NCBI RefSeq assembly: GCF_000150275.1
Contig: NW_002060946.1
Location: 4,359,454-4,423,453 of the forward strand
DNA from: Trichoplax adhaerens
Lineage: Eukaryota; Animalia; Placozoa
Length of the DNA: 64,000 nt
Direction: 5' to 3'
Every line of letters begins with the position of its first letter. Position 1 is the stretch's first letter. This document shows positions 17,575-42,600 of the stretch, piece after piece. The position numbers and the translations under genes were made by a program. The notes below the pieces were generated by a model. The model was not told the DNA's origin and did not search any database. It saw only the letters and a list, made by a program, of their open reading frames with translations.

Positions 17575-18700
17575 GTCCACTTCATCCTGCACCGAAGACA
17601 TTAGACGATAGCATAGCTAATTTGTTTATTTAATCCACTTCATCATCTCCCATCTCCCATATTAATTAATAATTAATCAAGTCAAGAAGGAAGAGCTTGC
17701 ACAATCCAGTCAAGAAAGAAGGGCTGCACAATCCAATCAAGAAGGAAGAGCTTGCATAATCAAGTCAAGAAGGAACAGCTTGAATAATCAACTCAAGAAG
17801 GAAGAGCTTGCACAATTAACTCAAGAAGGAACAGCTTGCATAATCCAATCAAGAAGGAAGAGCTTGCATAATCAAGTCAAGAAGGAACAGCTTGCATAAT
17901 CAACTCAAGAAGGAACAGCTTGCACAATTAACTCAAGAAGGAACAGCTTGCATAATCAACTCAAGAAGGAAAAGCTTGCATAATCAAGTCAAGAAGGAAA
18001 GGCTTGTACAGTCAAGTCAAGAAGGAAAAGCTTGCACAGTCAAGTCAAGAAGGAAAAGCTTGCACAATCAACTCAAGAAGCAAGAGCTTGCACAATCAAC
18101 TCAAGAAGGAAGAGCTTGCACAATCAACTCAAGAAGGAAGAGCTTGCACAATCAACTCAAGAAGGAAGGAAGAGCTTGCACTATCAACTCAAGAAGGAAA
18201 AGCTTGCATAATCAAGAAGGAAGAGCTGGGATGCTTCTCGTTCAAGGCTAAACTTGATCTCTTTACTGCTTCTATCGTTCTCCTTATTTCATACACTTTG
18301 GATGCTACCTACCTCATCCTGCACCGAAGGTATCAGACGATAGAATAGCTAATTTATTTATTTATTCCACTTCATCATCTTCCTTAATCAAGTCAAGAAG
18401 GAAGAGCTTGAGTGCTTCTCACACGTTGGATGCTACCTCATCCTGCACCGAAGGTGTCAGAGAATAGAATAACTAATTTATTTATTTTTTCCACTTCATC
18501 ATCTGCCTTAATCAAGTCAAGAAGGAAGACCTTGGACGCTTCTTCTTGAAGGCTGAATTTTGTCTGTTTACTGCTTCTACTGTCTTCCTTATTTCACACA
18601 CATAAAGTCAAGAAGGAAGAGCTTGGGCGCTTCTTGTTCAAGCCTAAACACCTTGGTCTCTTTACTGCTTCTATCATTATTGCACATATTGGATGCTACT
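17575..18700. repeat. Higher-order ~120-bp repeat that contains the 28-bp monomer
   Basis: CATCCTGCACCGAAG..AGACGATAG.ATAGCTAATTT.TTTATT..TCCACTTCATCATCT..TTAATCAAGTCAAGAAGGAAGAGCTTG recurs at about 17580, 18312 and 18437, with partial copies to about 18700. Confidence 0.85.
17676..18228. repeat. 28-bp minisatellite (TCAAGAAGGAAGAGCTTGCACAATCAAC)n, about 19-20 copies
   Basis: Directly visible tandem copies with few substitutions. They explain the repetitive ORFs 17892-18251 and 18004-18348. Confidence 0.95.
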
Positions 18701-34930: not shown

Positions 34931-35285
34931 AATATTGCAGAGTTCGAGTACAGTACAGTACAGTACGTCAGTACTACAGTACAGTACAGTACAGCAGTAC
35001 TGTAATATTACAGAATCAGAGTACTGAACACTGTGCTGTACTGTACACTGTACACTGTACAGTACTACAGTACAGCAACAATATTGCAGAGTCAGAGTAC
35101 TGTACTGTAATGAACACTGTGCTGTACAGTACAGTACAGTACAGTACTACAGCAGTAATATTGAAGAGTCAGAGTACTGAACACTATGCTGTACTGTACA
35201 GTACTGTACTGTACAGTACTGTACTGTACTGCATAATATTGTAGAGTCAGAGTAGTGAATCGTGAACACTGTGCTGTACTGTACA
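34931..35285. repeat. ~76-bp tandem repeat (5 copies) built from an AATATTGCAGAGTCAGAGTAC core plus CAGTA/TACTG tracts
   Basis: Cores start at 34931, 35004, 35080, 35157 and 35235, with a further core at about 35492. Confidence 0.85.
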
Positions 35286-36101
35286 ATTTTTTTTACTATC
35301 TATTGACATTCAGTAGTACGTTCATGTTATCATGATAATCTATCTTCGGAGATAGCCTTCTATGGGTATATATAAATACTATGCAGGAATTTCAACGGAA
35401 TACAACTTTGATTTTTTAACGAAGAGGAGACATCGAAAATAATCAGATTGTACTGTACAAGTGTACATTACAGTACTGTACAGTACGGTACAGTATTGCA
35501 GAGTCAGAGTACAGTACTGTACTGTACTGTACTGCACACTTGACCTTTCAGATTTTGAAGTTGAATACTGTACTGTACAGCTTCAAATGAGTCCATGACT
35601 TTATGTATCATATCTAAAGGTATAGAACTTATTACAGATTCAATGCTATTTCGTAAGTCAACTAAAGTAACTCTATCGTTACTTTTATAAACACGGTCCT
35701 TGACATAACCCCATAAGAAAAAATACGGGATTAAGTCAGGGGATCGTGCTGGCCAGATCGATTGATGTATTATTTGTTCACTTTCCGAAATTTATTTGTT
35801 TTTGGATGTTAAAATTTATCGGCTGAAATATCTTAGACATACTGTACAGTACAGTACAGTGTACTGTACAGTGTACAGTAGTAGCAATTAATTAGAATAC
35901 AGTACTGTACACTGCATCATTAGAATTCTCAACTGGTTAATAATAGGAGAGAGGGGAAGTAGAGTGTAATTATGCCATATTTACTTATTTGCGTAGAGTA
36001 CAGTGTACTGTACTCTATATTAAGTTAATCTAGCTGCAAATCTTCTTTTTAAGGTACAGTACAGTTGTACAGTACTGCAGATTGTTTGGCCGTTCATTCA
36101 G

Positions 36102-36960
36102 GGGGATTTCCCAGTTTATTGAAAGTTATACTGTACTGTACCCCTAGTTCTTTAGGGGATAACTTTAAATAAACTAGCATCCGCTAATTTTGGTAACCGC
36201 ACATTTGGCAGTGACAAGTTGCTATTTCACATCCCTATAGTAAAGTACATACAGTACAGTTAATTACACATGACTTTATTGATCAACCTGAAAGAAACTA
36301 AAAGTAGCTGACGTCATCGTGAAGTATTGTGCCTAGTATCGCCTTTCATTTTAAAATCCTATTGTTTCCAAGTATTTTGAACATTTCCGGTAAGTAGAAT
36401 TAATTTTTGTTATCATTATCATTTCATATCTGGGTAGGGGTAAACCAATCCGAATTTCGTATTACCGGTACTACTCATTCATTCTTTTTATGAAGTAGGA
36501 AATCATTGCTGAAGGCCATTCCATGCTTGTCTACAAGCTATTTTTAGTAAGGTAAATAAACATGATTTAAACGTTATTTCTATAAATTATGAATTACGGC
36601 ATACAATATTATACAATATCGCTGGCAACACTTTGCAATATTGTACATTTCTTCTCGTACAGTACTTGTCCACTACAGGACAAACATGGACAACAACGGA
36701 ATGCATAGTAATCATTTTTAACCAATCGACCAACTTCAATTCTAAATGATATACACCTCTGCGACTACAATAACTACTGTATGTTTTTGAACATTAGAGC
36801 ATAAATGTTCACACCGTAATCGAAAGGAATATTAATTAATGTACACGATTAAATTAAATTACTATGCAATCTTTATTTTTAAAATTCTGGTAAAAATTAC
36901 GTCATGCATGGTCTTTCAGCTAGCTCTGCCAACGTTACGTTTGATGCAAGCTCATAAAAA
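36102..36960 (+). promoter_or_regulatory. Cluster of inducible/immune-type TF motifs upstream of the secreted protein gene
   Basis: kB GGGGATTTCCC 36102-36112; IRF-E-like GAAACTAAAAGT 36294-36305; CRE TGACGTCA 36309-36316; GAS-like TTCCGGTAA 36385-36393 and TTCTGGTAA 36885-36893; TTACGTCA 36897-36904; C/EBP-ATF TGATGCAAG 36942-36950; TATA-like CATAAAAA 36953-36960. Confidence 0.5.
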
Positions 36961-37065
36961 GACGTTCCTAAAGATTATCTGATCCAAAGAACAGCATCGC
37001 TCTATTACAGTAGATCAATTTTAAACTTATTATTTCCTGCTTCCTTTTTATTTACCACTATCAGG

Positions 37066-37689
37066 ATGCACATCTATTCCATTTTGGTCTTTATCGCGCT
37101 TTTATCGTCAAATTCGGCTGAGGCAAGGCCATCGAAAAGGAACGTATTTGATGCTTTTGCTGATAATCATCCAGGATCAGACAATAAACTATTCAACAAT
37201 TTGAAATATTTGGCAAATAATAGCCATCGTTTACAAGAAAAGTTGAGCAGGAATCAAGATAACCTAAAGTTGAAGTTGTGTTCCACAATTACCAATTCCA
37301 TAGATTGCATGGTACCTGCTAATTTTTCATTGACTAGTCTATCACGAAATAAAACTTTATTGGCCCAATTCTCCAATGATAACTGCTCAAAAAATGTTGC
37401 CGATTCTGGATTAAGTACGTATTATCGATACTTCAGTTTTGCCAAAATTCTTCTCTTAAATGTGCAACAAAATCTAGGTAATACTATTATTGATTCAGAA
37501 TTAAATGCTACTCTTGAATCATTATTCCAAATCTCTAAGCTATTAAGTTGTAATCTTAATCAGTTTATGATGAGTAATATACCAGTTTGTTTAATACCAA
37601 TAGATGTAAGATACAAATGTAATATAAGTTTAACGTTATTAAGTAAAGTATTGCAATTACTAAAAATCGATTTACAATCAAGTAAGTAA
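37066..37689 (+). CDS. Intronless secreted 207-aa protein, candidate long-chain four-helix cytokine (IL-6/G-CSF/LIF-like)
   Basis: A long uninterrupted ORF in AT-rich DNA. It has a signal peptide (likely cleavage AEA|RP), 6 Cys, 6 N-glycosylation sequons and four amphipathic helical segments. Coding status is likely; the family assignment is inferred. Confidence 0.75.
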   Translation: MHIYSILVFIALLSSNSAEARPSKRNVFDAFADNHPGSDNKLFNNLKYLANNSHRLQEKLSRNQDNLKLKLCSTITNSIDCMVPANFSLTSLSRNKTLLAQFSNDNCSKNVADSGLSTYYRYFSFAKILLLNVQQNLGNTIIDSELNATLESLFQISKLLSCNLNQFMMSNIPVCLIPIDVRYKCNISLTLLSKVLQLLKIDLQSSK

Positions 37690-39615
37690 GAGTTTATGCT
37701 GGTTAATTTACCTTTACTAATTATTGTAGTATATAATTAATGACCATTGTGTTATTCTTTATCTATATCTTGCATATTTTATCATTCGACTAGAGTACTT
37801 GTTTCGATCCTATAACACATAAATGAAATCAGTAAATATTTTATCGCCTACAATAAAATCGATATAGCTGTTTTTGTACATGCATTGTAATATCACGAAA
37901 ATATCTGTTAATCTTCGTTTAATGTTAACTAAGCTATGTTATCGATAAGATTTTTAAAAATGAATATTAGCAACACAATTGAATTAATAGAGTGTACACG
38001 AATATTTTTCAACCTCTATTTTAATATATATGTTATATCTTAATAATTTTGATAAAGGCACTAATATATAACTAAACAATAATACTAAAAATTGACTATG
38101 ACCGTCATCGATTAAAATAATAAAGTTAAACTAATTCATAATTAAAAAAATGACCGTACTCTTATTGCAGTCTACTACGTTATAAGAAAATTAGATACCA
38201 TGTTTAATAGTATTGAATAATAATTCTTTTTTATGGTATAATGTACTGTAGAAGCCTATGCTAATACAAATTCGGTTACTATTACATCAGAAGATAAATT
38301 AGCAGCCAATTACTGTTAGAATTCTAATCCGTATATGATGCAACTAATACTACGTGTATATTTCATGCAATTGCTAATCTCTGCCTTAAATGAGTAACCT
38401 CGATAAAAGGAGGATTGGTTTGATAAATCACAAATGAATGCAAGTGAAAGCTCTTTGCATTATAATTTAAGGCTATGGACTATACATACATAATAATATA
38501 TGCATATTTTGATTACATCACTCCAAAATAGGAATACTTGTCGAAATTTTCGCTTTAAACAGCTTCAACGAAAACATATCGCTGTAAATATACCACAATA
38601 ATATACTCGCATACACGTACGACTTCGCGATCTTGTGACCGTTATTATAAGATTATTATTGAAAATCGATAACTGGATAACACAATACCGTACTAATCCA
38701 ATCTGACGACGATTCAAATTTACACTCTTCAATTTTATTACCTAATTTTGTCCACAAAATATCAGTTTATTTTATGCATAATGATAGCATGAATAATTAG
38801 TACAGATTCGTCAAATCAATGCATAAAAATTTTTATTATGTACCGTATACTACTGACAGTGAATAAATTATGATTGATAATATCTTATAAGTTTTTTTCA
38901 TCAAACAAATTTTAACTTGCATATGGGATTTTTAGAATATCTTCAGGCTAAATTCTATTATATTATATTATTCTCCATTTTTATTAATTATGAATAAATT
39001 ACTGGGGATATCGTATCTGTCAGATATTTTATAGATATCTTCATTAAAAATATATATTAATCTTCTGTATGATTATACAGCAAGCGAGTATGTTCGTACA
39101 TATTCATTGAAATAGTTAGCGCAATGTGCTCGATATGTCTATAAACATATGTAATAAATGTATACATTTTGATATGTAATAATTTAGAATAAAAATCAAT
39201 TTTGCATGATGTGATCGTTTATAGTTATAACTGTAAATTGTTAGCTTTAAATGCGTATCCAATAAATAACCCTTTCTTACGTAGCAATTCTGGTACTGTT
39301 AATGTTATTAAGTGCGGATACCGATAATTTGATCAACTATACTTGTGACTATACTCGTACAACAGATACTAAATAATAGCTTTTGAGTAATGAGCAAGTA
39401 GACATATTCCTCATCATCTGGTCATGTAAAAAAATTGTATCACACTTCCGAAACATGTAACAATATCCATTAAGTTTGAACAGTATATATTAATACTTAA
39501 TCATTTATATAGGGAGATTTTGTAAAATCGAATAAGCAAATATAACCACAATTCTAATAATACCTATTGTGTATTCATCTATACAATACAACGTAAAAAT
39601 TAACGTTTGAGAATC

Positions 39616-42600
39616 CTATTCAATTCGGCTTTGCAATTTCTTCAATAATTCGTCAATATAATCCTGTACGTAATAAATTTTCACATTTATTATATCAGAA
39701 TCAGAAAGGATAACGACGTGAAAGTAGGTAGTGAGGACTAAAGCTAAACTTACTAATTTCATGTAGCATATAATTCTTAACTTATTGCGTTTTATATTTT
39801 CTTGCTCAAGCACTTTCAACGCATCATTGAGGCATATATTTTCGTCCATTCCTATCACCTAAAAGTTGTTTCATTCAAAGACGTACATAGTTATAATATA
39901 CATCAGCCATTTTTATGCGAAAGCTGTATATTTTGTTATATCGTACTTTCGTCAATACTTATAAAAATGCATTACTATACCATAGATAAGCATATAATCT
40001 TTTCGCATCTTCCACACTTTTGATCATTTGGTAAAAGGCTTAAAGGATCAACCTTGTGTTTAGTTTTAGATTCTAAATAAAAATGAGCGCATTTCTTAAC
40101 ACTGAATAAGTAAGTATGCTGTAGGGAGTGATAAAAAGTTAGCCATATTATTTTTCATACTCTTATCTTCATCTTGAATTACAGTCATCTTCAAACCAAA
40201 CTTTAAGAGGGAATCAATAGCTTCACTTTCAGATTTTCTATTATTACAAAATAATCGTATTGATACACGTAAGTAAATAATAAAATGTGAAAAGCTTAAT
40301 ATAAATAAAAAATAGCGTTTAAATACAACATTTACTTAATAGCCGAAAGTTCATGGATAAGTTGGCGACAAATTGATTGACCATACGATTCCTAACAAAG
40401 CGCATTTATGTATATTTCAACGTTTCAATTAGAGAACATGGTGATTTTTCAAAATTATAATTATCTAGCATGTTATTTAAGAATTACAACTTAAAAGTAC
40501 TTATCAAAAATATGTAACAAGTTACTTACGGATGCGGCTGACATACAAATAATTGCTCTCTCAATTGAAAAATGTAGTTTTTTATACGTCATTAACTCCT
40601 GCATGATGATTATTATTCAATAGAAGAGAAAATCGAAATTAATATTGATATGCCAATTCCTAGAGCAGACATTTGCACTACTCACCTTACATATCTTTAC
40701 TCCGTCAGTAAGCCAATTTGTAGTTGCAAATTGTACTTCTTCAGAACAGTTGTAACCACAATTCGTGAATGTGTAATAGACCTAGTTAAATTGTTCAAAT
40801 ATATTTATACCCTTTGAAAGATACGCACATAACTTTAAAATTGCACTCACTGAAGGCAGAATAACAATAAATTCTTTCGGCTCTTGGACAATTCGATAAA
40901 CTGGAACGCCCATTTTCGCTAAAATACTTGGTGGTATCTAAACATTGTGTTGTATAGTATACAATATTAAAATTTGCAGACAATAAAGTTTAAGAATTAT
41001 TACCCTATAATCAGGCTATACAGCTAGAATTGTAGTGACTTAAAGCCGTAATCATACGACTCTTGTTGTTAATAGGGAAATTACTACTATAGTAGACGAA
41101 ATAAATATTATAATGTAAAATTCTTACAAGGACTGACGGATGATATTCTTTATTGCAAGACTTCAATGTATAAAATTTTATTGCCTTTTCGAGCCTTTTC
41201 GCATATCTTGAACTAACGCAATACCTAATTCAATGTCAAGGAAAATATCGTTTTAATTGTATTGATATGCAAACAAATCTAACTTTTTGATAATTTTTTA
41301 CATAATAGATAAATTTTTGTTTTATTACCAGATTCTCGGAGAGCCTGTATGGCAATAGTTCATTATGGAAAATCCATACTCAGAAAAACTCCAGGGCGTA
41401 GAAGAGTACAACATGCCAATATTTAGTCGCGGTGTAGTTAGATCTAATGTTAGAATAGAACAGAAATCTCAAATTAACGAACCATAAGTTAATAAGATTA
41501 CAGAAATGCGGATGGTAATGGTTTAGTGTACGTACTCTTATTATCATACTTAAACATAAAATTTGCTACCTGATACTGGCCCAAAATGATGAGAAATAAA
41601 ATTTTTATTTTTATTAAGTAAACATAAATTCCAAGAATGCCTAAAATTAAAAATATAAGATATAGAAGAGATCTTTATAGGGTCTACTGTTTACGCAAAA
41701 CATAAGAATTTAATTTATTTATAACTTCTAATAGCTACGACATAATTGGAGTAAGAAAAGTATAATTTTTGATATTATATTAGTTTAACCTCGAGTATGG
41801 GCTTGATTTTTGCGTAGGAAATCCACTTCTCGAAAGAAAATATTTAAAAAATGTGATATTATTTCGCTTAAGTAAAAATATTTAGGTGTGCTACCTAATT
41901 TCAATTCATACCTGCCATGCGCTTTGGTATCTAATGTAACTGAGTGAACACTAACGTGGAATTCACGATTCTCGACTAATTTCCAAAATTCGTTCTGAAA
42001 AATTAAATGTAATTAAATGTAACGTTCATTAAGGCGTAAATCTTATCATGGTCTAATAAGTATAAGAAACTGTGCAATTAAGTTCTGTTTTCCATTAATG
42101 ATGTGAATATATCCATGAATACAGTACTACCTCTAGTTGCTTCGGTAAATGTTTAGTTTTTGACACTGTTTCAGAGAAATTATAAGCCATGCGCCGAAAT
42201 GACGACAGTGCAAAGCTACGACCCTAGTAGTTCAGATATCGGTTAAGTAATTCTATAGGCATACTATAAGTAATATCTGCGATACAGATAGCATTCATAC
42301 CTGTACGTCACATAAATCTATTTCCAATGGATCTAAAATAAAAGTTTTAATGCAGATGAAAAAATTTTTTATATAATTACTAGAAATATTTTTAAACAGT
42401 GCAACGACGCATACAAACCATGTCATCCTTATGATAACTTATACAAGTATTTACCGTTGTCTTTCGTTTTCTCTTCCTCTTTTCGACAAAATTCTAAAAT
42501 ATTAGTTTTTTCATCCTGATTATTGGCGTGAGTATGAAATTATATAACAAGTTAGTTGTGATGGGTACGAAATACCATTACGTTCATTGAAAAATTAAAT

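What the first reader, a model, noticed from the sequence alone, without database searches (positions are those of the whole stretch)
37066..37689. Intronless secreted orphan resembling an IL-6/G-CSF-family four-helix cytokine in an apparently early-branching animal
Seen: single-exon 207-aa ORF with a signal peptide (1-20), a KR site (24-25), Cys at 72/81/107/162/175/185 and six NxS/T sequons. It has four amphipathic stretches: A about 41-72, a long AB loop, B about 110-137, C about 143-168, and D about 182-205. Known: IL-6 and G-CSF carry a Cys pair closing helix A (G-CSF EKLCATYKLC; here LKLCSTITNSIDC). They also carry the signature C-x9-C-x6-G-L-x2-[FY]-x3-L; here the match is C-x7-GL-ST-Y-YRY-F, lacking the first Cys. 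Helix C SELNATLESLFQISKLLSCNLNQFM aligns without gaps to recalled G-CSF PELGPTLDTLQLDVADFATTIWQQM. Helix D has the L-x3-L-x6-L spacing and ends in KIDL, like the xxDL end of CNTF/CT-1. Inference: this is a class-I helical cytokine ligand for a gp130/Domeless-like JAK-STAT receptor. Such ligands diverge too fast for BLAST and are poorly documented outside bilaterians. Caveat: the CD loop (about 13-15 aa) is short for a long-chain topology.
Basis: partly seen in the sequence, partly recalled or inferred. Interest (0 to 1): 0.92.

Follow-up and report, generated by a model that had tools for sequence, protein, structure and literature searches.

The report
Trichoplax secreted helical cytokine-like orphan gene
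A real, transcribed, intron-less gene of the simple animal Trichoplax encodes a secreted all-helical protein with no detectable sequence relatives; a protein language model places it next to IL-6/CNTF/LIF-type cytokines, which would be new for so early-branching an animal, but its 3-D fold, family membership and receptor are unproven.

Summary
Window 37066-37689 (+) is a 207-codon ORF with a canonical signal peptide, K24-R25, six Cys, six N-x-S/T sequons and four long predicted helices. It is a real gene: RNA contigs from three studies cover about 37018-37870 unspliced, Trichoplax sp. H2 annotates the identical protein, and the only two H1/H2 differences in the ORF are synonymous while the flanks differ more.

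It is a strict sequence orphan. Pfam, PDB sequences, 5.8 billion and 1.84 billion protein sets and its own genome return only itself.

The cytokine reading is partly supported, by one line of evidence. ESM Atlas neighbours, with or without the signal peptide, are all long-chain helical cytokines (IL-6, G-CSF, IL-11, IL-12A, LIF/OSM, CT-1/CNTF, GH). The Atlas's own moderate model (pTM 0.54) best matches a cardiotrophin-2-like cluster (TM 0.55).

Against it: the strict IL-6 signature is not met, two AlphaFold2 runs gave pLDDT about 39, and no JAK-specific or class-I receptor domains were found. Two STAT genes were found.

The scan has already reported similar candidates on other DNA of this genome (s1-733977, s1-752961). 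I found no homology between this ORF and the s1-733977 array.

Odds: cytokine-like fold about 45%; canonical gp130/JAK ligand under 10%.

The parts
36954..36960 (+). ATAAAAA, a possible TATA-like box about 60 nt upstream of the first RNA-covered base
   Evidence: Read directly from the sequence. This is inference only, because such strings are common in 32% GC DNA.
37018..37065 (+). 5' untranslated region. It contains no upstream ATG, has A at -3 of the start codon, and carries a polypyrimidine tract plus AG just before the ATG.
   Evidence: RNA contig X5 starts at 37018 and runs colinear with the genome. RNA runs X5, X7 and X13 give no cover over 36288-37017. Sequence.
37066..37689 (+). Coding sequence: 207 codons plus stop, single exon
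   Evidence: The identical protein is annotated in GCA_003344405.1. The two H1/H2 differences (37098, 37341) are both synonymous.
37066..37125 (+). Signal peptide, residues 1-20, with predicted cleavage after A-E-A
   Evidence: Sequence. Assigned by the -3/-1 rule, which is established knowledge; no predictor was run.
37126..37140 (+). RPSKR: a short N-terminal piece ending in the dibasic K24-R25, a possible convertase site
   Evidence: Sequence. Whether it is used is untested.
37183..37305 (+). Predicted helix A (residues 40-80), whose end carries C72 and C81
   Evidence: DSSP of AF2 models. Hydrophobic moment exceeds shuffles, p 0.001.
37306..37413 (+). Long A-B loop (residues 81-116, 36 aa) with three sequons, a short helix at 96-102, and C107
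37384..37434 (+). C107-x7-G-L-x2-Y-x3-F: a relaxed match to the second half of the IL-6/G-CSF signature, lying at the start of helix B
   Evidence: the relaxed pattern occurs in 200 of 200,000 shuffles, and the strict pattern is not matched.
37414..37473 (+). Predicted helix B (residues 117-136)
37495..37572 (+). Predicted helix C (residues 144-169), containing C162 and the N147 sequon
   Evidence: Amphipathic, p 0.026.
37573..37605 (+). Short C-D loop SNIPVCLIPID (residues 170-180, 11 aa) with C175 and two Pro
   Evidence: The boundaries come from low-confidence models.
37606..37659 (+). Predicted helix D (residues 181-198), containing C185 and the N186 sequon
37690..37870 (+). 3' untranslated region with AATAAA at 37852-37857
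   Evidence: RNA contigs X5 (to 37775) and X7 (37643-37868); a further X7 contig reaches 38050. Hexamer read.

Best explanation
This is a genuine, transcribed, single-exon gene, so far seen only in Trichoplax (H1 and H2). It encodes a secreted protein of about 21 kDa after signal-peptide cleavage. The mature protein is basic (calculated pI about 9) and probably N-glycosylated. It is built from four long helices joined by a long A-B loop, a short B-C loop and a short C-D loop. Its six cysteines probably form three disulfides.

The most likely fold is a long-chain four-helix bundle of the kind used by IL-6/CNTF/LIF-type cytokines and growth hormone. The most likely role is therefore an extracellular signalling ligand that binds a cell-surface receptor through its helix faces.

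Shown: the ORF, its transcription, its conservation between H1 and H2, its orphan status and its helical secondary structure.

Inferred: secretion, disulfides and glycosylation (from sequence rules); the bundle fold (from one protein-language-model source); the ligand function (by analogy).

Membership of the IL-6/G-CSF family is not shown. The receptor is unknown and is probably not a canonical gp130/Domeless-JAK module, because no such parts were found in the genome.
For: - Gene reality. The ORF is far longer than window shuffles give. RNA contigs from three studies (X5, X7, X13) cover 37018-37870/38050 colinearly, with nothing upstream. These runs are shown to be RNA by spliced contigs of the neighbouring JARID2-like gene. 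The identical 207-aa protein is annotated in Trichoplax sp. H2, GCA_003344405.1.
- Constraint. H1 and H2 differ at 2 sites in the ORF, both synonymous, against 13 differing alignment columns in the 1 kb upstream and 7 in the 1 kb downstream (about 9 and 7 events after merging one indel cluster). At the flank rate of about 0.8%, roughly 3.8 non-synonymous changes would be expected and none is seen (my Poisson estimate, p about 0.02).
- Coding signal. The codon-usage score in frame (0.16) lies within the range of known exons of the window (0.08-0.25), and the off-frames are negative.
- Helices. Two AF2 runs give the same four long helices. Helices A and C are significantly amphipathic.
- Fold and kind. 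ESM Atlas feature neighbours of the whole protein and of residues 26-207 are all long-chain helical cytokine clusters: IL6, GCSF, IL11, IL12A, LIF_OSM, CNTF/CT-1 and Hormone_1. Scores are 0.84-0.89 with 167-191 shared features (all but one row at 171 or more). The tool states that 170 or more is seen in 9 of 10 true family hits and in 1-2 of 10 chance hits. By structure, the best hit for residues 26-207 is a cardiotrophin-2-like cluster at TM 0.55/0.48 over 151 residues, above all unrelated helical hits (0.43 or less by query).
- Motif. A relaxed IL-6-type C..GL..Y...F motif sits exactly at the loop/helix-B junction (p 0.001 on shuffles, before allowing for post-hoc relaxation).
Against: - There is no sequence or profile support at all: Pfam gives 0 families at E<=10; the PDB gives only a chance hit at E 0.67; the 5.8-billion and 1.84-billion protein sets return only the protein itself; there is no paralogue in the genome.
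- The strict IL-6 signature and its first Cys are absent.
- AlphaFold2 without an alignment gives pLDDT 39-40 and pTM 0.24-0.25 and no compact bundle. Foldseek and VIA searches with those models give nothing meaningful.
- The Atlas evidence is a single source with scores below 0.9, which the tool calls 'a lead only'. With the whole protein as query, the Atlas structure search gave no cytokine. The Atlas model itself is only moderate (pTM 0.54).
- The predicted C-D loop has 11 residues, which is short for an up-up-down-down crossover.
- GC content is flat across codon positions (0.32/0.32/0.29), unlike known exons of the window. This fits a young or very fast-evolving gene.
- Contigs cannot give the strand of the RNA.
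Confidence: 0.45

Rival explanations
1. A lineage-specific secreted all-helical protein that is not a cytokine. It could be a component of mucus or secretory granules, a defence protein, or a carrier or lipid-binding helical bundle. On this reading its resemblance to cytokines reflects only shared general features: secreted, about 190 aa, Leu-rich amphipathic helices, and a few disulfides.
For: It is a complete orphan by sequence. The language-model scores are below 0.9, and the tool warns that shuffled proteins reach 0.8 a third of the time and that a third of shuffles also give ten-of-ten agreement on clan. There is no confident 3-D model. No JAK or class-I receptor domains were found. The C-D loop is short. 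The scan reports many other Trichoplax-only secreted orphans.
Against: The neighbours are consistently one clan in two queries, with shared-feature counts in the range the tool gives for true family hits. The one structural neighbour above TM 0.5 is a cytokine cluster. The loop pattern (long A-B, short B-C) and the C..GL..Y motif at the start of helix B fit the cytokine layout.
Confidence: 0.38
2. A bona fide homologue of the IL-6/G-CSF/Unpaired class-I cytokines that signals through a gp130/Domeless-like receptor, JAK and STAT.
For: The Atlas neighbours and structural hit, the relaxed signature, and two STAT genes in the genome.
Against: None of the three JAK-specific Pfam domains and none of the three class-I receptor ligand-binding domains gave even a first-look candidate in the genome. 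The strict family signature and the Pfam models are not met. A published survey found IL-6-family ligands only in vertebrates and IL6R no earlier than molluscs (PMC13203501), although that survey used BLAST and did not cover placozoans in detail.
Confidence: 0.08
3. A transcribed non-coding or very young (de novo) locus whose long ORF and signal-peptide-like start arose by chance in AT-rich DNA. On this reading no functional protein is made.
For: By my arithmetic, about 0.3 ATG ORFs of this length are expected by chance genome-wide at this composition. Base composition is flat over codon positions, and the amino-acid make-up is AT-driven (L, S, N, I, K). There are no relatives anywhere. Two non-synonymous variants (M82I, T149I) occur in other strains.
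Against: H1 and H2 show 0 non-synonymous and 2 synonymous differences, with more diverged flanks. Across all haplotypes seen there are 3 synonymous and 2 non-synonymous changes, where about 1:3 is expected under neutrality. The ORF has a canonical signal peptide, an even number of Cys, and four long helices of which two are significantly amphipathic. It fills about 73% of a compact transcript and starts at the transcript's first ATG.
Confidence: 0.06
4. A prohormone or neuropeptide precursor from which small peptides are cut.
For: A signal peptide followed by a dibasic K24-R25 site. Trichoplax is known, from my own knowledge of the field, to use many secreted peptides.
Against: There is only one dibasic site. 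It would release a 5-residue piece and leave a 182-residue helical protein. There are no repeated peptide copies and no Gly-Lys-Arg amidation sites.
Confidence: 0.03

Closest known systems
Long-chain class-I helical cytokines of the IL-6/gp130 group (IL-6, IL-11, LIF/OSM, CNTF, cardiotrophins; Pfam IL6, IL11, LIF_OSM, CNTF) and G-CSF
   Same: Secreted, about 180-200 mature residues. Four long helices with a long A-B loop and a short B-C loop. A small disulfide loop at the end of helix A. A Cys followed by G-L-x2-Y at the start of helix B. They are the nearest neighbours by language-model features, and a cardiotrophin-2-like cluster is the nearest by the Atlas model.
   Different: No HMM or BLAST-level similarity. 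The strict signature is not met and the first Cys of the second disulfide is missing. There are six Cys rather than four. The predicted C-D loop is much shorter. The gene is intron-less, whereas vertebrate genes of this group have introns (my own knowledge). No gp130-type receptor or JAK was found in the genome.
Drosophila Unpaired (Upd1-3), the invertebrate IL-6-like ligands of Domeless
   Same: Fast-evolving, glycosylated, secreted helical proteins that standard sequence searches do not link to vertebrate cytokines (my own knowledge; PMC13203501 mentions Upd as the insect ligand).
   Different: Upd acts through Domeless and the JAK Hopscotch, neither of which was detected in this genome.
Growth hormone / prolactin family (Pfam Hormone_1)
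   Same: It appears among the Atlas neighbours. The layout of one long-range and two short-range candidate disulfides (C72-C81, C107-C162, C175-C185, if paired in that order) recalls prolactin (my own knowledge; pairing not tested).
   Different: No sequence match. The family is known only from vertebrates.
Trichoplax array of secreted cytokine-fold-like orphan genes 78-97 kb upstream on the same contig (earlier scan finding s1-733977; G000:C1411:4262725-4280980)
   Same: Single-exon genes for secreted, sequon-rich, Cys-containing proteins of 235-253 aa on the same chromosome piece. The signal peptides begin alike: M..YS[IL]L.
   Different: The mature parts show no similarity: BLASTP gave nothing; hhalign aligned only 12 signal-peptide columns at probability 1.4%; alignment scores are no better than shuffles, z<=0.

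Membership tests
IL-6/G-CSF/MGF family (Pfam PF00489 IL6, PF16647 GCSF) and gp130-group relatives (PF01291 LIF_OSM, PF01110 CNTF, PF07400 IL11) | Significant match to the family profile HMM | tested here: not met
   hmmscan against Pfam-A at E<=10 returned 0 families. phmmer against PDB sequences found no cytokine.
   Neither the full pattern nor its second half matches. Only the relaxed C-x(6,8)-G-L-x2-[FY]-x3-[LIVMF] matches, at residues 107-123, which happens in 200 of 200,000 shuffles.
IL-6/G-CSF/MGF family | Two conserved disulfides: one closing the end of helix A, one tying the A-B loop to helix B | tested here: inconclusive
   C72-x8-C81 could be the first, though the spacing differs from the C-x5-C that I recall for IL-6 and G-CSF. 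The second lacks its first Cys. The actual pairing is not testable here.
Long-chain class-I helical cytokine fold (four-helix bundle, up-up-down-down) | Four long helices with long A-B and C-D crossover loops and a short B-C loop, packed as a bundle | tested here: inconclusive
   The four helices, the 36-aa A-B loop and the 7-aa B-C loop are present. The C-D loop is only about 11 aa. AF2 tertiary models are unusable at pLDDT 39-40. The Atlas model (pTM 0.54) gives TM 0.55/0.48 to a cardiotrophin-2-like cluster over 151 residues.
Long-chain class-I helical cytokine fold | Nearest neighbours in an independent representation belong to the clan | tested here: met
   All listed family-bearing Atlas neighbours in two queries are IL6, GCSF, IL11, IL12, LIF_OSM, CNTF or Hormone_1 clusters. 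Scores are 0.84-0.89 with 167-191 shared features. The tool rates scores under 0.9 as a lead only.
Ligand of a gp130/Domeless-JAK-STAT pathway | The genome encodes a receptor with a cytokine-binding homology region | tested here: not met
   EpoR_lig-bind, IL6Ra-bind and Lep_receptor_Ig gave no candidates. There is only a borderline Tissue_fac-type FN3 hit (27.9 bits against a cut-off of 27) and a sub-threshold Interfer-bind hit. The search is exon-wise and weakly sensitive.
Ligand of a gp130/Domeless-JAK-STAT pathway | The genome encodes JAK | tested here: not met
   FERM_F2, Jak1_Phl and FERM_F1 (the JAK-specific Pfam domains) gave 0 candidates even at E<=1 to 10. The same sensitivity caveat applies.
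Ligand of a gp130/Domeless-JAK-STAT pathway | The genome encodes STAT | tested here: met
   STAT_alpha scores over the cut-off at two loci (34.9 and 27.9 bits), each with a faint STAT_bind hit about 350-450 nt away.
Ligand of a gp130/Domeless-JAK-STAT pathway | Binding to the receptor and STAT activation | not testable with these tools
   This needs recombinant protein and living animals or cells.
Trichoplax secreted orphan array (s1-733977) | Detectable sequence homology to the three intact array genes | tested here: not met
   Only the first 12 signal-peptide residues align.

The most novel reading that the evidence does not exclude
The protein is a true long-chain helical cytokine, of common descent with the IL-6/CNTF/LIF/Unpaired group, in Placozoa. 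Together with the other candidates the scan has found in this genome, that would place the origin of helical cytokines before the split of placozoans, cnidarians and bilaterians. These ligands would then have first worked without JAK, through another receptor type (for example a two-FN3-module receptor) feeding the two STAT genes or another pathway.
Probability: 0.22. Interest if true: 0.85.

Novelty: new member of a known kind. Interest (0 to 1): 0.55.

Why it matters
Class-I helical cytokines are documented only in bilaterians: vertebrate IL-6, G-CSF, LIF and CNTF, and insect Unpaired. A recent survey found IL-6-family ligands only in vertebrates (PMC13203501). Where these ligands came from, and what they bound before gp130-type receptors and JAK existed, is an open question.

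An expressed, compact, intron-less Trichoplax gene whose product looks like such a ligand gives a concrete protein to express, crystallise and use as bait for its receptor in one of the simplest animals.

If the fold is confirmed, the origin of helical cytokines moves back to before the placozoan-bilaterian split. If it is not, the gene is one more fast-evolving placozoan secreted orphan, and a useful warning about language-model neighbours for Leu-rich helical proteins.

Tried and rejected
- Sequence homology. Pfam at E<=10, PDB sequences, the word-indexed 5.8-billion protein set, the full HMMER scan of 1.84 billion representatives and a six-frame search of the own genome all returned only the protein itself or chance hits.
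- Paralogy with the upstream orphan array (s1-733977) was rejected for the mature protein. Only the signal-peptide start is similar.
- Run X1, offered as possible RNA, covers the whole 5.5 kb evenly with unspliced contigs. I treated it as DNA and not as expression evidence.
- Literature. The held library contains no paper on placozoan helical cytokines. Statements on CRLF3 in Placozoa conflict: absent in PMC6797617, present in PMC12026705. I did not resolve this.
  - HHpred-type profile comparison with cytokine families, because no cytokine sequences were available from any tool and I did not type any from memory.
  - A search for orthologues in other placozoan genera, because no eukaryotic genome collection was available.
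  - Assignment of the transcript strand, because only contigs were available.
The read-laying run used 5,501 letters.
Full report
**What is there.** Window 37066-37689 (+) translates to a 207-residue protein without stops. It is the second-longest ATG ORF of the 64-kb window. None of 50 shuffles of the window reached that length; the maximum was 157 codons. Cys lie at 72, 81, 107, 162, 175 and 185. N-x-S/T sequons lie at 51, 86, 95, 106, 147 and 186. K24-R25 follows the signal peptide. The N-terminus has a 12-residue hydrophobic core and Ala at -3 and -1, so cleavage after residue 20 is expected by rule; no predictor was run.

**Which genome.** The window lies in a 105.6-Mb assembly of 1,414 contigs at about 32% GC. 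The identical protein is annotated on contig NOWV01000005.1 of GCA_003344405.1. I recognise that accession as Trichoplax sp. H2 (Kamm et al.; my own knowledge). The window is 99.4% identical to it over 20.6 kb. The window is therefore from Trichoplax, most likely T. adhaerens H1 (inference). In the H2 record the neighbours are a PAC4 gene and an ATP-synthase-epsilon gene upstream, and a JmjN/ARID/JmjC (JARID2-like) gene tail-to-tail downstream.

**Is it a gene?** I laid contigs of four runs on 35000-40500.
- X1 covers everything evenly with unspliced contigs. I treat it as DNA.
- X5, X7 and X13 come from three different studies. They carry spliced contigs of the JARID2-like gene, with joints at 39662/39753, 39856/39979 and 40072/40161, so they are RNA.
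- In these RNA runs the ORF is covered colinearly: X5 at 37018-37775; X7 at 37068-37510 and 37643-38050; X13 at 37126-37472. There is no RNA cover over 36288-37017.
- The transcript therefore runs from about 37018, 48 nt before the ATG with no upstream ATG and A at -3, to about 37870. That end is 11 nt past an AATAAA at 37852-37857. No intron is present.
- Contigs cannot give the strand. However, the minus strand has no ORF of 50 codons or more in this interval.

**Constraint.** H1 and H2 differ at two sites in the ORF, 37098 and 37341. Both are synonymous. The 1 kb upstream carries 13 differing alignment columns and the 1 kb downstream carries 7; merging one indel cluster gives about 9 and 7 events. 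At that flank rate of about 0.8%, roughly 3.8 non-synonymous changes would be expected and none is seen (my Poisson estimate, p about 0.02). Other strains in the runs add one synonymous change (37119) and two non-synonymous changes, M82I and T149I; T149I removes the N147 sequon. A simple codon-usage score trained on nine ORFs of the window puts the ORF (0.16 in frame, negative off frame) inside the range of those ORFs (0.08-0.25). GC content is unusually flat over the three codon positions. Overall this is a real protein-coding gene under at least moderate constraint, probably young or fast-evolving.

**Orphan status.** There is no Pfam family at E<=10. The PDB gives only a chance hit at E 0.67. 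Only the protein itself appears among 5.8 billion proteins and among 1.84 billion cluster representatives read in full by HMMER. There is no paralogue in the genome. I cannot tell whether other placozoan genera are represented in those sets, so 'Trichoplax-only' means 'not seen elsewhere so far'.

**Structure.**
- Two AlphaFold2 runs without an alignment (residues 21-207 and 38-207) gave pLDDT 39-40 and pTM 0.24-0.25.
- Their secondary structure is reproducible: helices at 40-80, 117-136, 144-169 and 181-198, with short helices at 27-33 and 96-102.
- Helices A and C are significantly amphipathic; B and D are hydrophobic but not significantly amphipathic.
- Loop lengths are 36 residues (A-B), 7 (B-C) and 11 (C-D). 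The first two fit a long-chain cytokine. The third is short for a crossover, although SNIPVCLIPID is Pro-rich and beta-branched, and the helix ends come from low-confidence models.

**The one positive line for the cytokine reading.**
- The ESM Atlas holds this sequence, with its own model at pTM 0.54.
- By language-model features, the whole protein's neighbours are an unnamed cnidarian cluster, a mollusc cluster in which 11% of members hit Pfam IL6, and then chordate clusters named G-CSF-like, IL-6, IL-11, IL-12 alpha, LIF and Hormone_1. Scores are 0.86-0.89 with 179-191 of 256 shared features.
- Without the signal peptide (residues 26-207) the neighbours are the same families plus cardiotrophin-1/CNTF, at 0.84-0.88 with 167-186 shared features. 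So the signal peptide does not drive the result.
- The structure search with the Atlas model of residues 26-207 puts a cardiotrophin-2-like cluster first (TM 0.55 by query, 0.48 by target, 151 residues aligned over 40-207). Unrelated bacterial helical proteins follow at 0.43 or less by query.
- The tool's own calibration says that scores under 0.9 are leads only, and that a third of shuffled proteins also get ten-of-ten clan agreement. It also says that shared-feature counts of 170 or more are typical of true family hits (9 in 10) and rare for chance hits (1-2 in 10).
- With the whole protein as query, the structure search found no cytokine.
- I count all of this as one moderately informative source.

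**The signature.** The relaxed form C107-x7-G-L-x2-Y-x3-F is present exactly where helix B begins, and occurs in 0.1% of shuffles. After allowing for the freedom taken in relaxing the pattern, this is suggestive at best. The alignments to G-CSF helix C and the CNTF-like ending rest on recalled sequences and were not tested.

**The pathway.**
- Six-frame Pfam searches of the genome found STAT_alpha over the cut-off at two loci.
- Each of those loci has a faint STAT_bind hit about 350-450 nt away. This confirms two STAT genes. It also shows that the exon-by-exon search barely detects a domain that must be there.
- The JAK-specific domains FERM_F2, Jak1_Phl and FERM_F1 gave not even first-look candidates. 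Neither did the class-I receptor domains EpoR_lig-bind, IL6Ra-bind and Lep_receptor_Ig.
- A Tissue_fac-type FN3 hit just over the cut-off (27.9 bits) and a sub-threshold Interfer-bind hit are the only receptor-like signals.
- Published surveys place IL-6-family ligands in vertebrates only and IL6R no earlier than molluscs (PMC13203501). They disagree on whether CRLF3 exists in Placozoa (PMC6797617 against PMC12026705).

**Earlier notes of this scan.**
- Similar candidates have already been reported on other DNA of this genome. One is an array of secreted 'cytokine-fold-like' orphans ending 78 kb upstream of my window (s1-733977). Another is a spliced IL-6/Unpaired-like gene on another contig (s1-752961). 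A third is a class-II-cytokine-receptor-like membrane protein (s1-741771).
- I fetched the array and aligned its three intact single-exon genes, which are 31-34% identical to the first.
- My protein shares with them only the start of the signal peptide, M..YS[IL]L: hhalign aligned 12 columns at probability 1.4%.
- BLASTP and shuffle-calibrated alignment scores of the mature parts (z<=0) show nothing. Common descent is not shown.
- In fast-evolving secreted families the signal peptide can outlast the mature part (my own knowledge), so common descent is not excluded either.

**Verdict.**
I put about 45% on a long-chain four-helix, cytokine-like secreted ligand, about 22% on true common descent with the IL-6/CNTF/Unpaired group, and under 10% on signalling through a canonical gp130-type receptor and JAK.
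- The main rival, at about 38%, is a placozoan-specific secreted helical protein with no cytokine relationship.
- The decisive work is a placozoan orthologue alignment followed by HHpred and AlphaFold, a solved structure, and a receptor screen.

Noticed in passing
window 34947-35880: Blocks of tandem repeats built on 5-nt units (AGTAC/CTGTA/GTACA) and a 77-nt unit lie in the intergenic region upstream of the gene. They draw enormous summed contig depth in every run, both DNA and RNA (hundreds to about 30,000, against 3-90 for the surroundings). This looks like a very high-copy, transcribed repeat family of this genome.
   Followed up: partly
window 38707-40237 (- strand): This is the 3' end of the JARID2-like gene (JmjN/ARID/JmjC in the H2 annotation). 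RNA contigs show three short introns at 39663-39752, 39857-39978 and 40073-40160. A 3' UTR of about 0.9 kb ends near 38707, tail-to-tail with the orphan gene.
   Followed up: partly
window 37030-37065: A long polypyrimidine tract ending in AG lies directly in front of the ATG and looks like a 3' splice site. RNA contig X5 runs straight through it from 37018. An alternative transcript with an upstream non-coding exon is not excluded.
   Followed up: partly
G000:C1411:4262725-4280980 (L008:727-1431, L008:8527-9261, L009:8220-8978): Three intact single-exon genes for secreted 235-253-aa proteins, 31-34% identical to the first. Their signal peptides begin M..YSLL, like the MHIYSIL of the gene studied here. 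The mature parts show no similarity to it.
   Followed up: yes
L004 (G000:C1414:9845024-9845248, -) and L005 (G000:C1413:8995512-8995727, -): Two STAT loci. STAT_alpha exons score over the Pfam cut-off, and each has a faint STAT_bind hit about 350-450 nt downstream on the same strand. No JAK-specific domain was found anywhere in the genome.
   Followed up: partly
L011 (G000:C1400:1370063-1370332, -): An internal exon matches Pfam Tissue_fac (the first FN3 of class-II cytokine receptors and tissue factor) just over the cut-off (27.9 bits), with four weaker hits elsewhere. I did not build the gene model.
   Followed up: partly
run X1 on window 35000-40500: Run X1, listed as 'RNA? (a guess)', covers genes and intergenic DNA evenly at about 93x with an unspliced 2,784-nt contig, so it behaves as a DNA library. 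It carries the variants M82I (37311) and T149I (37511).
   Followed up: yes
window 17892-18348 (+): Overlapping ORFs in this stretch encode a repeated ...KSLHNQLKKE..AQSTQEG.AC.INSRR... unit, pointing to a tandem repeat. I did not examine it.
   Followed up: no
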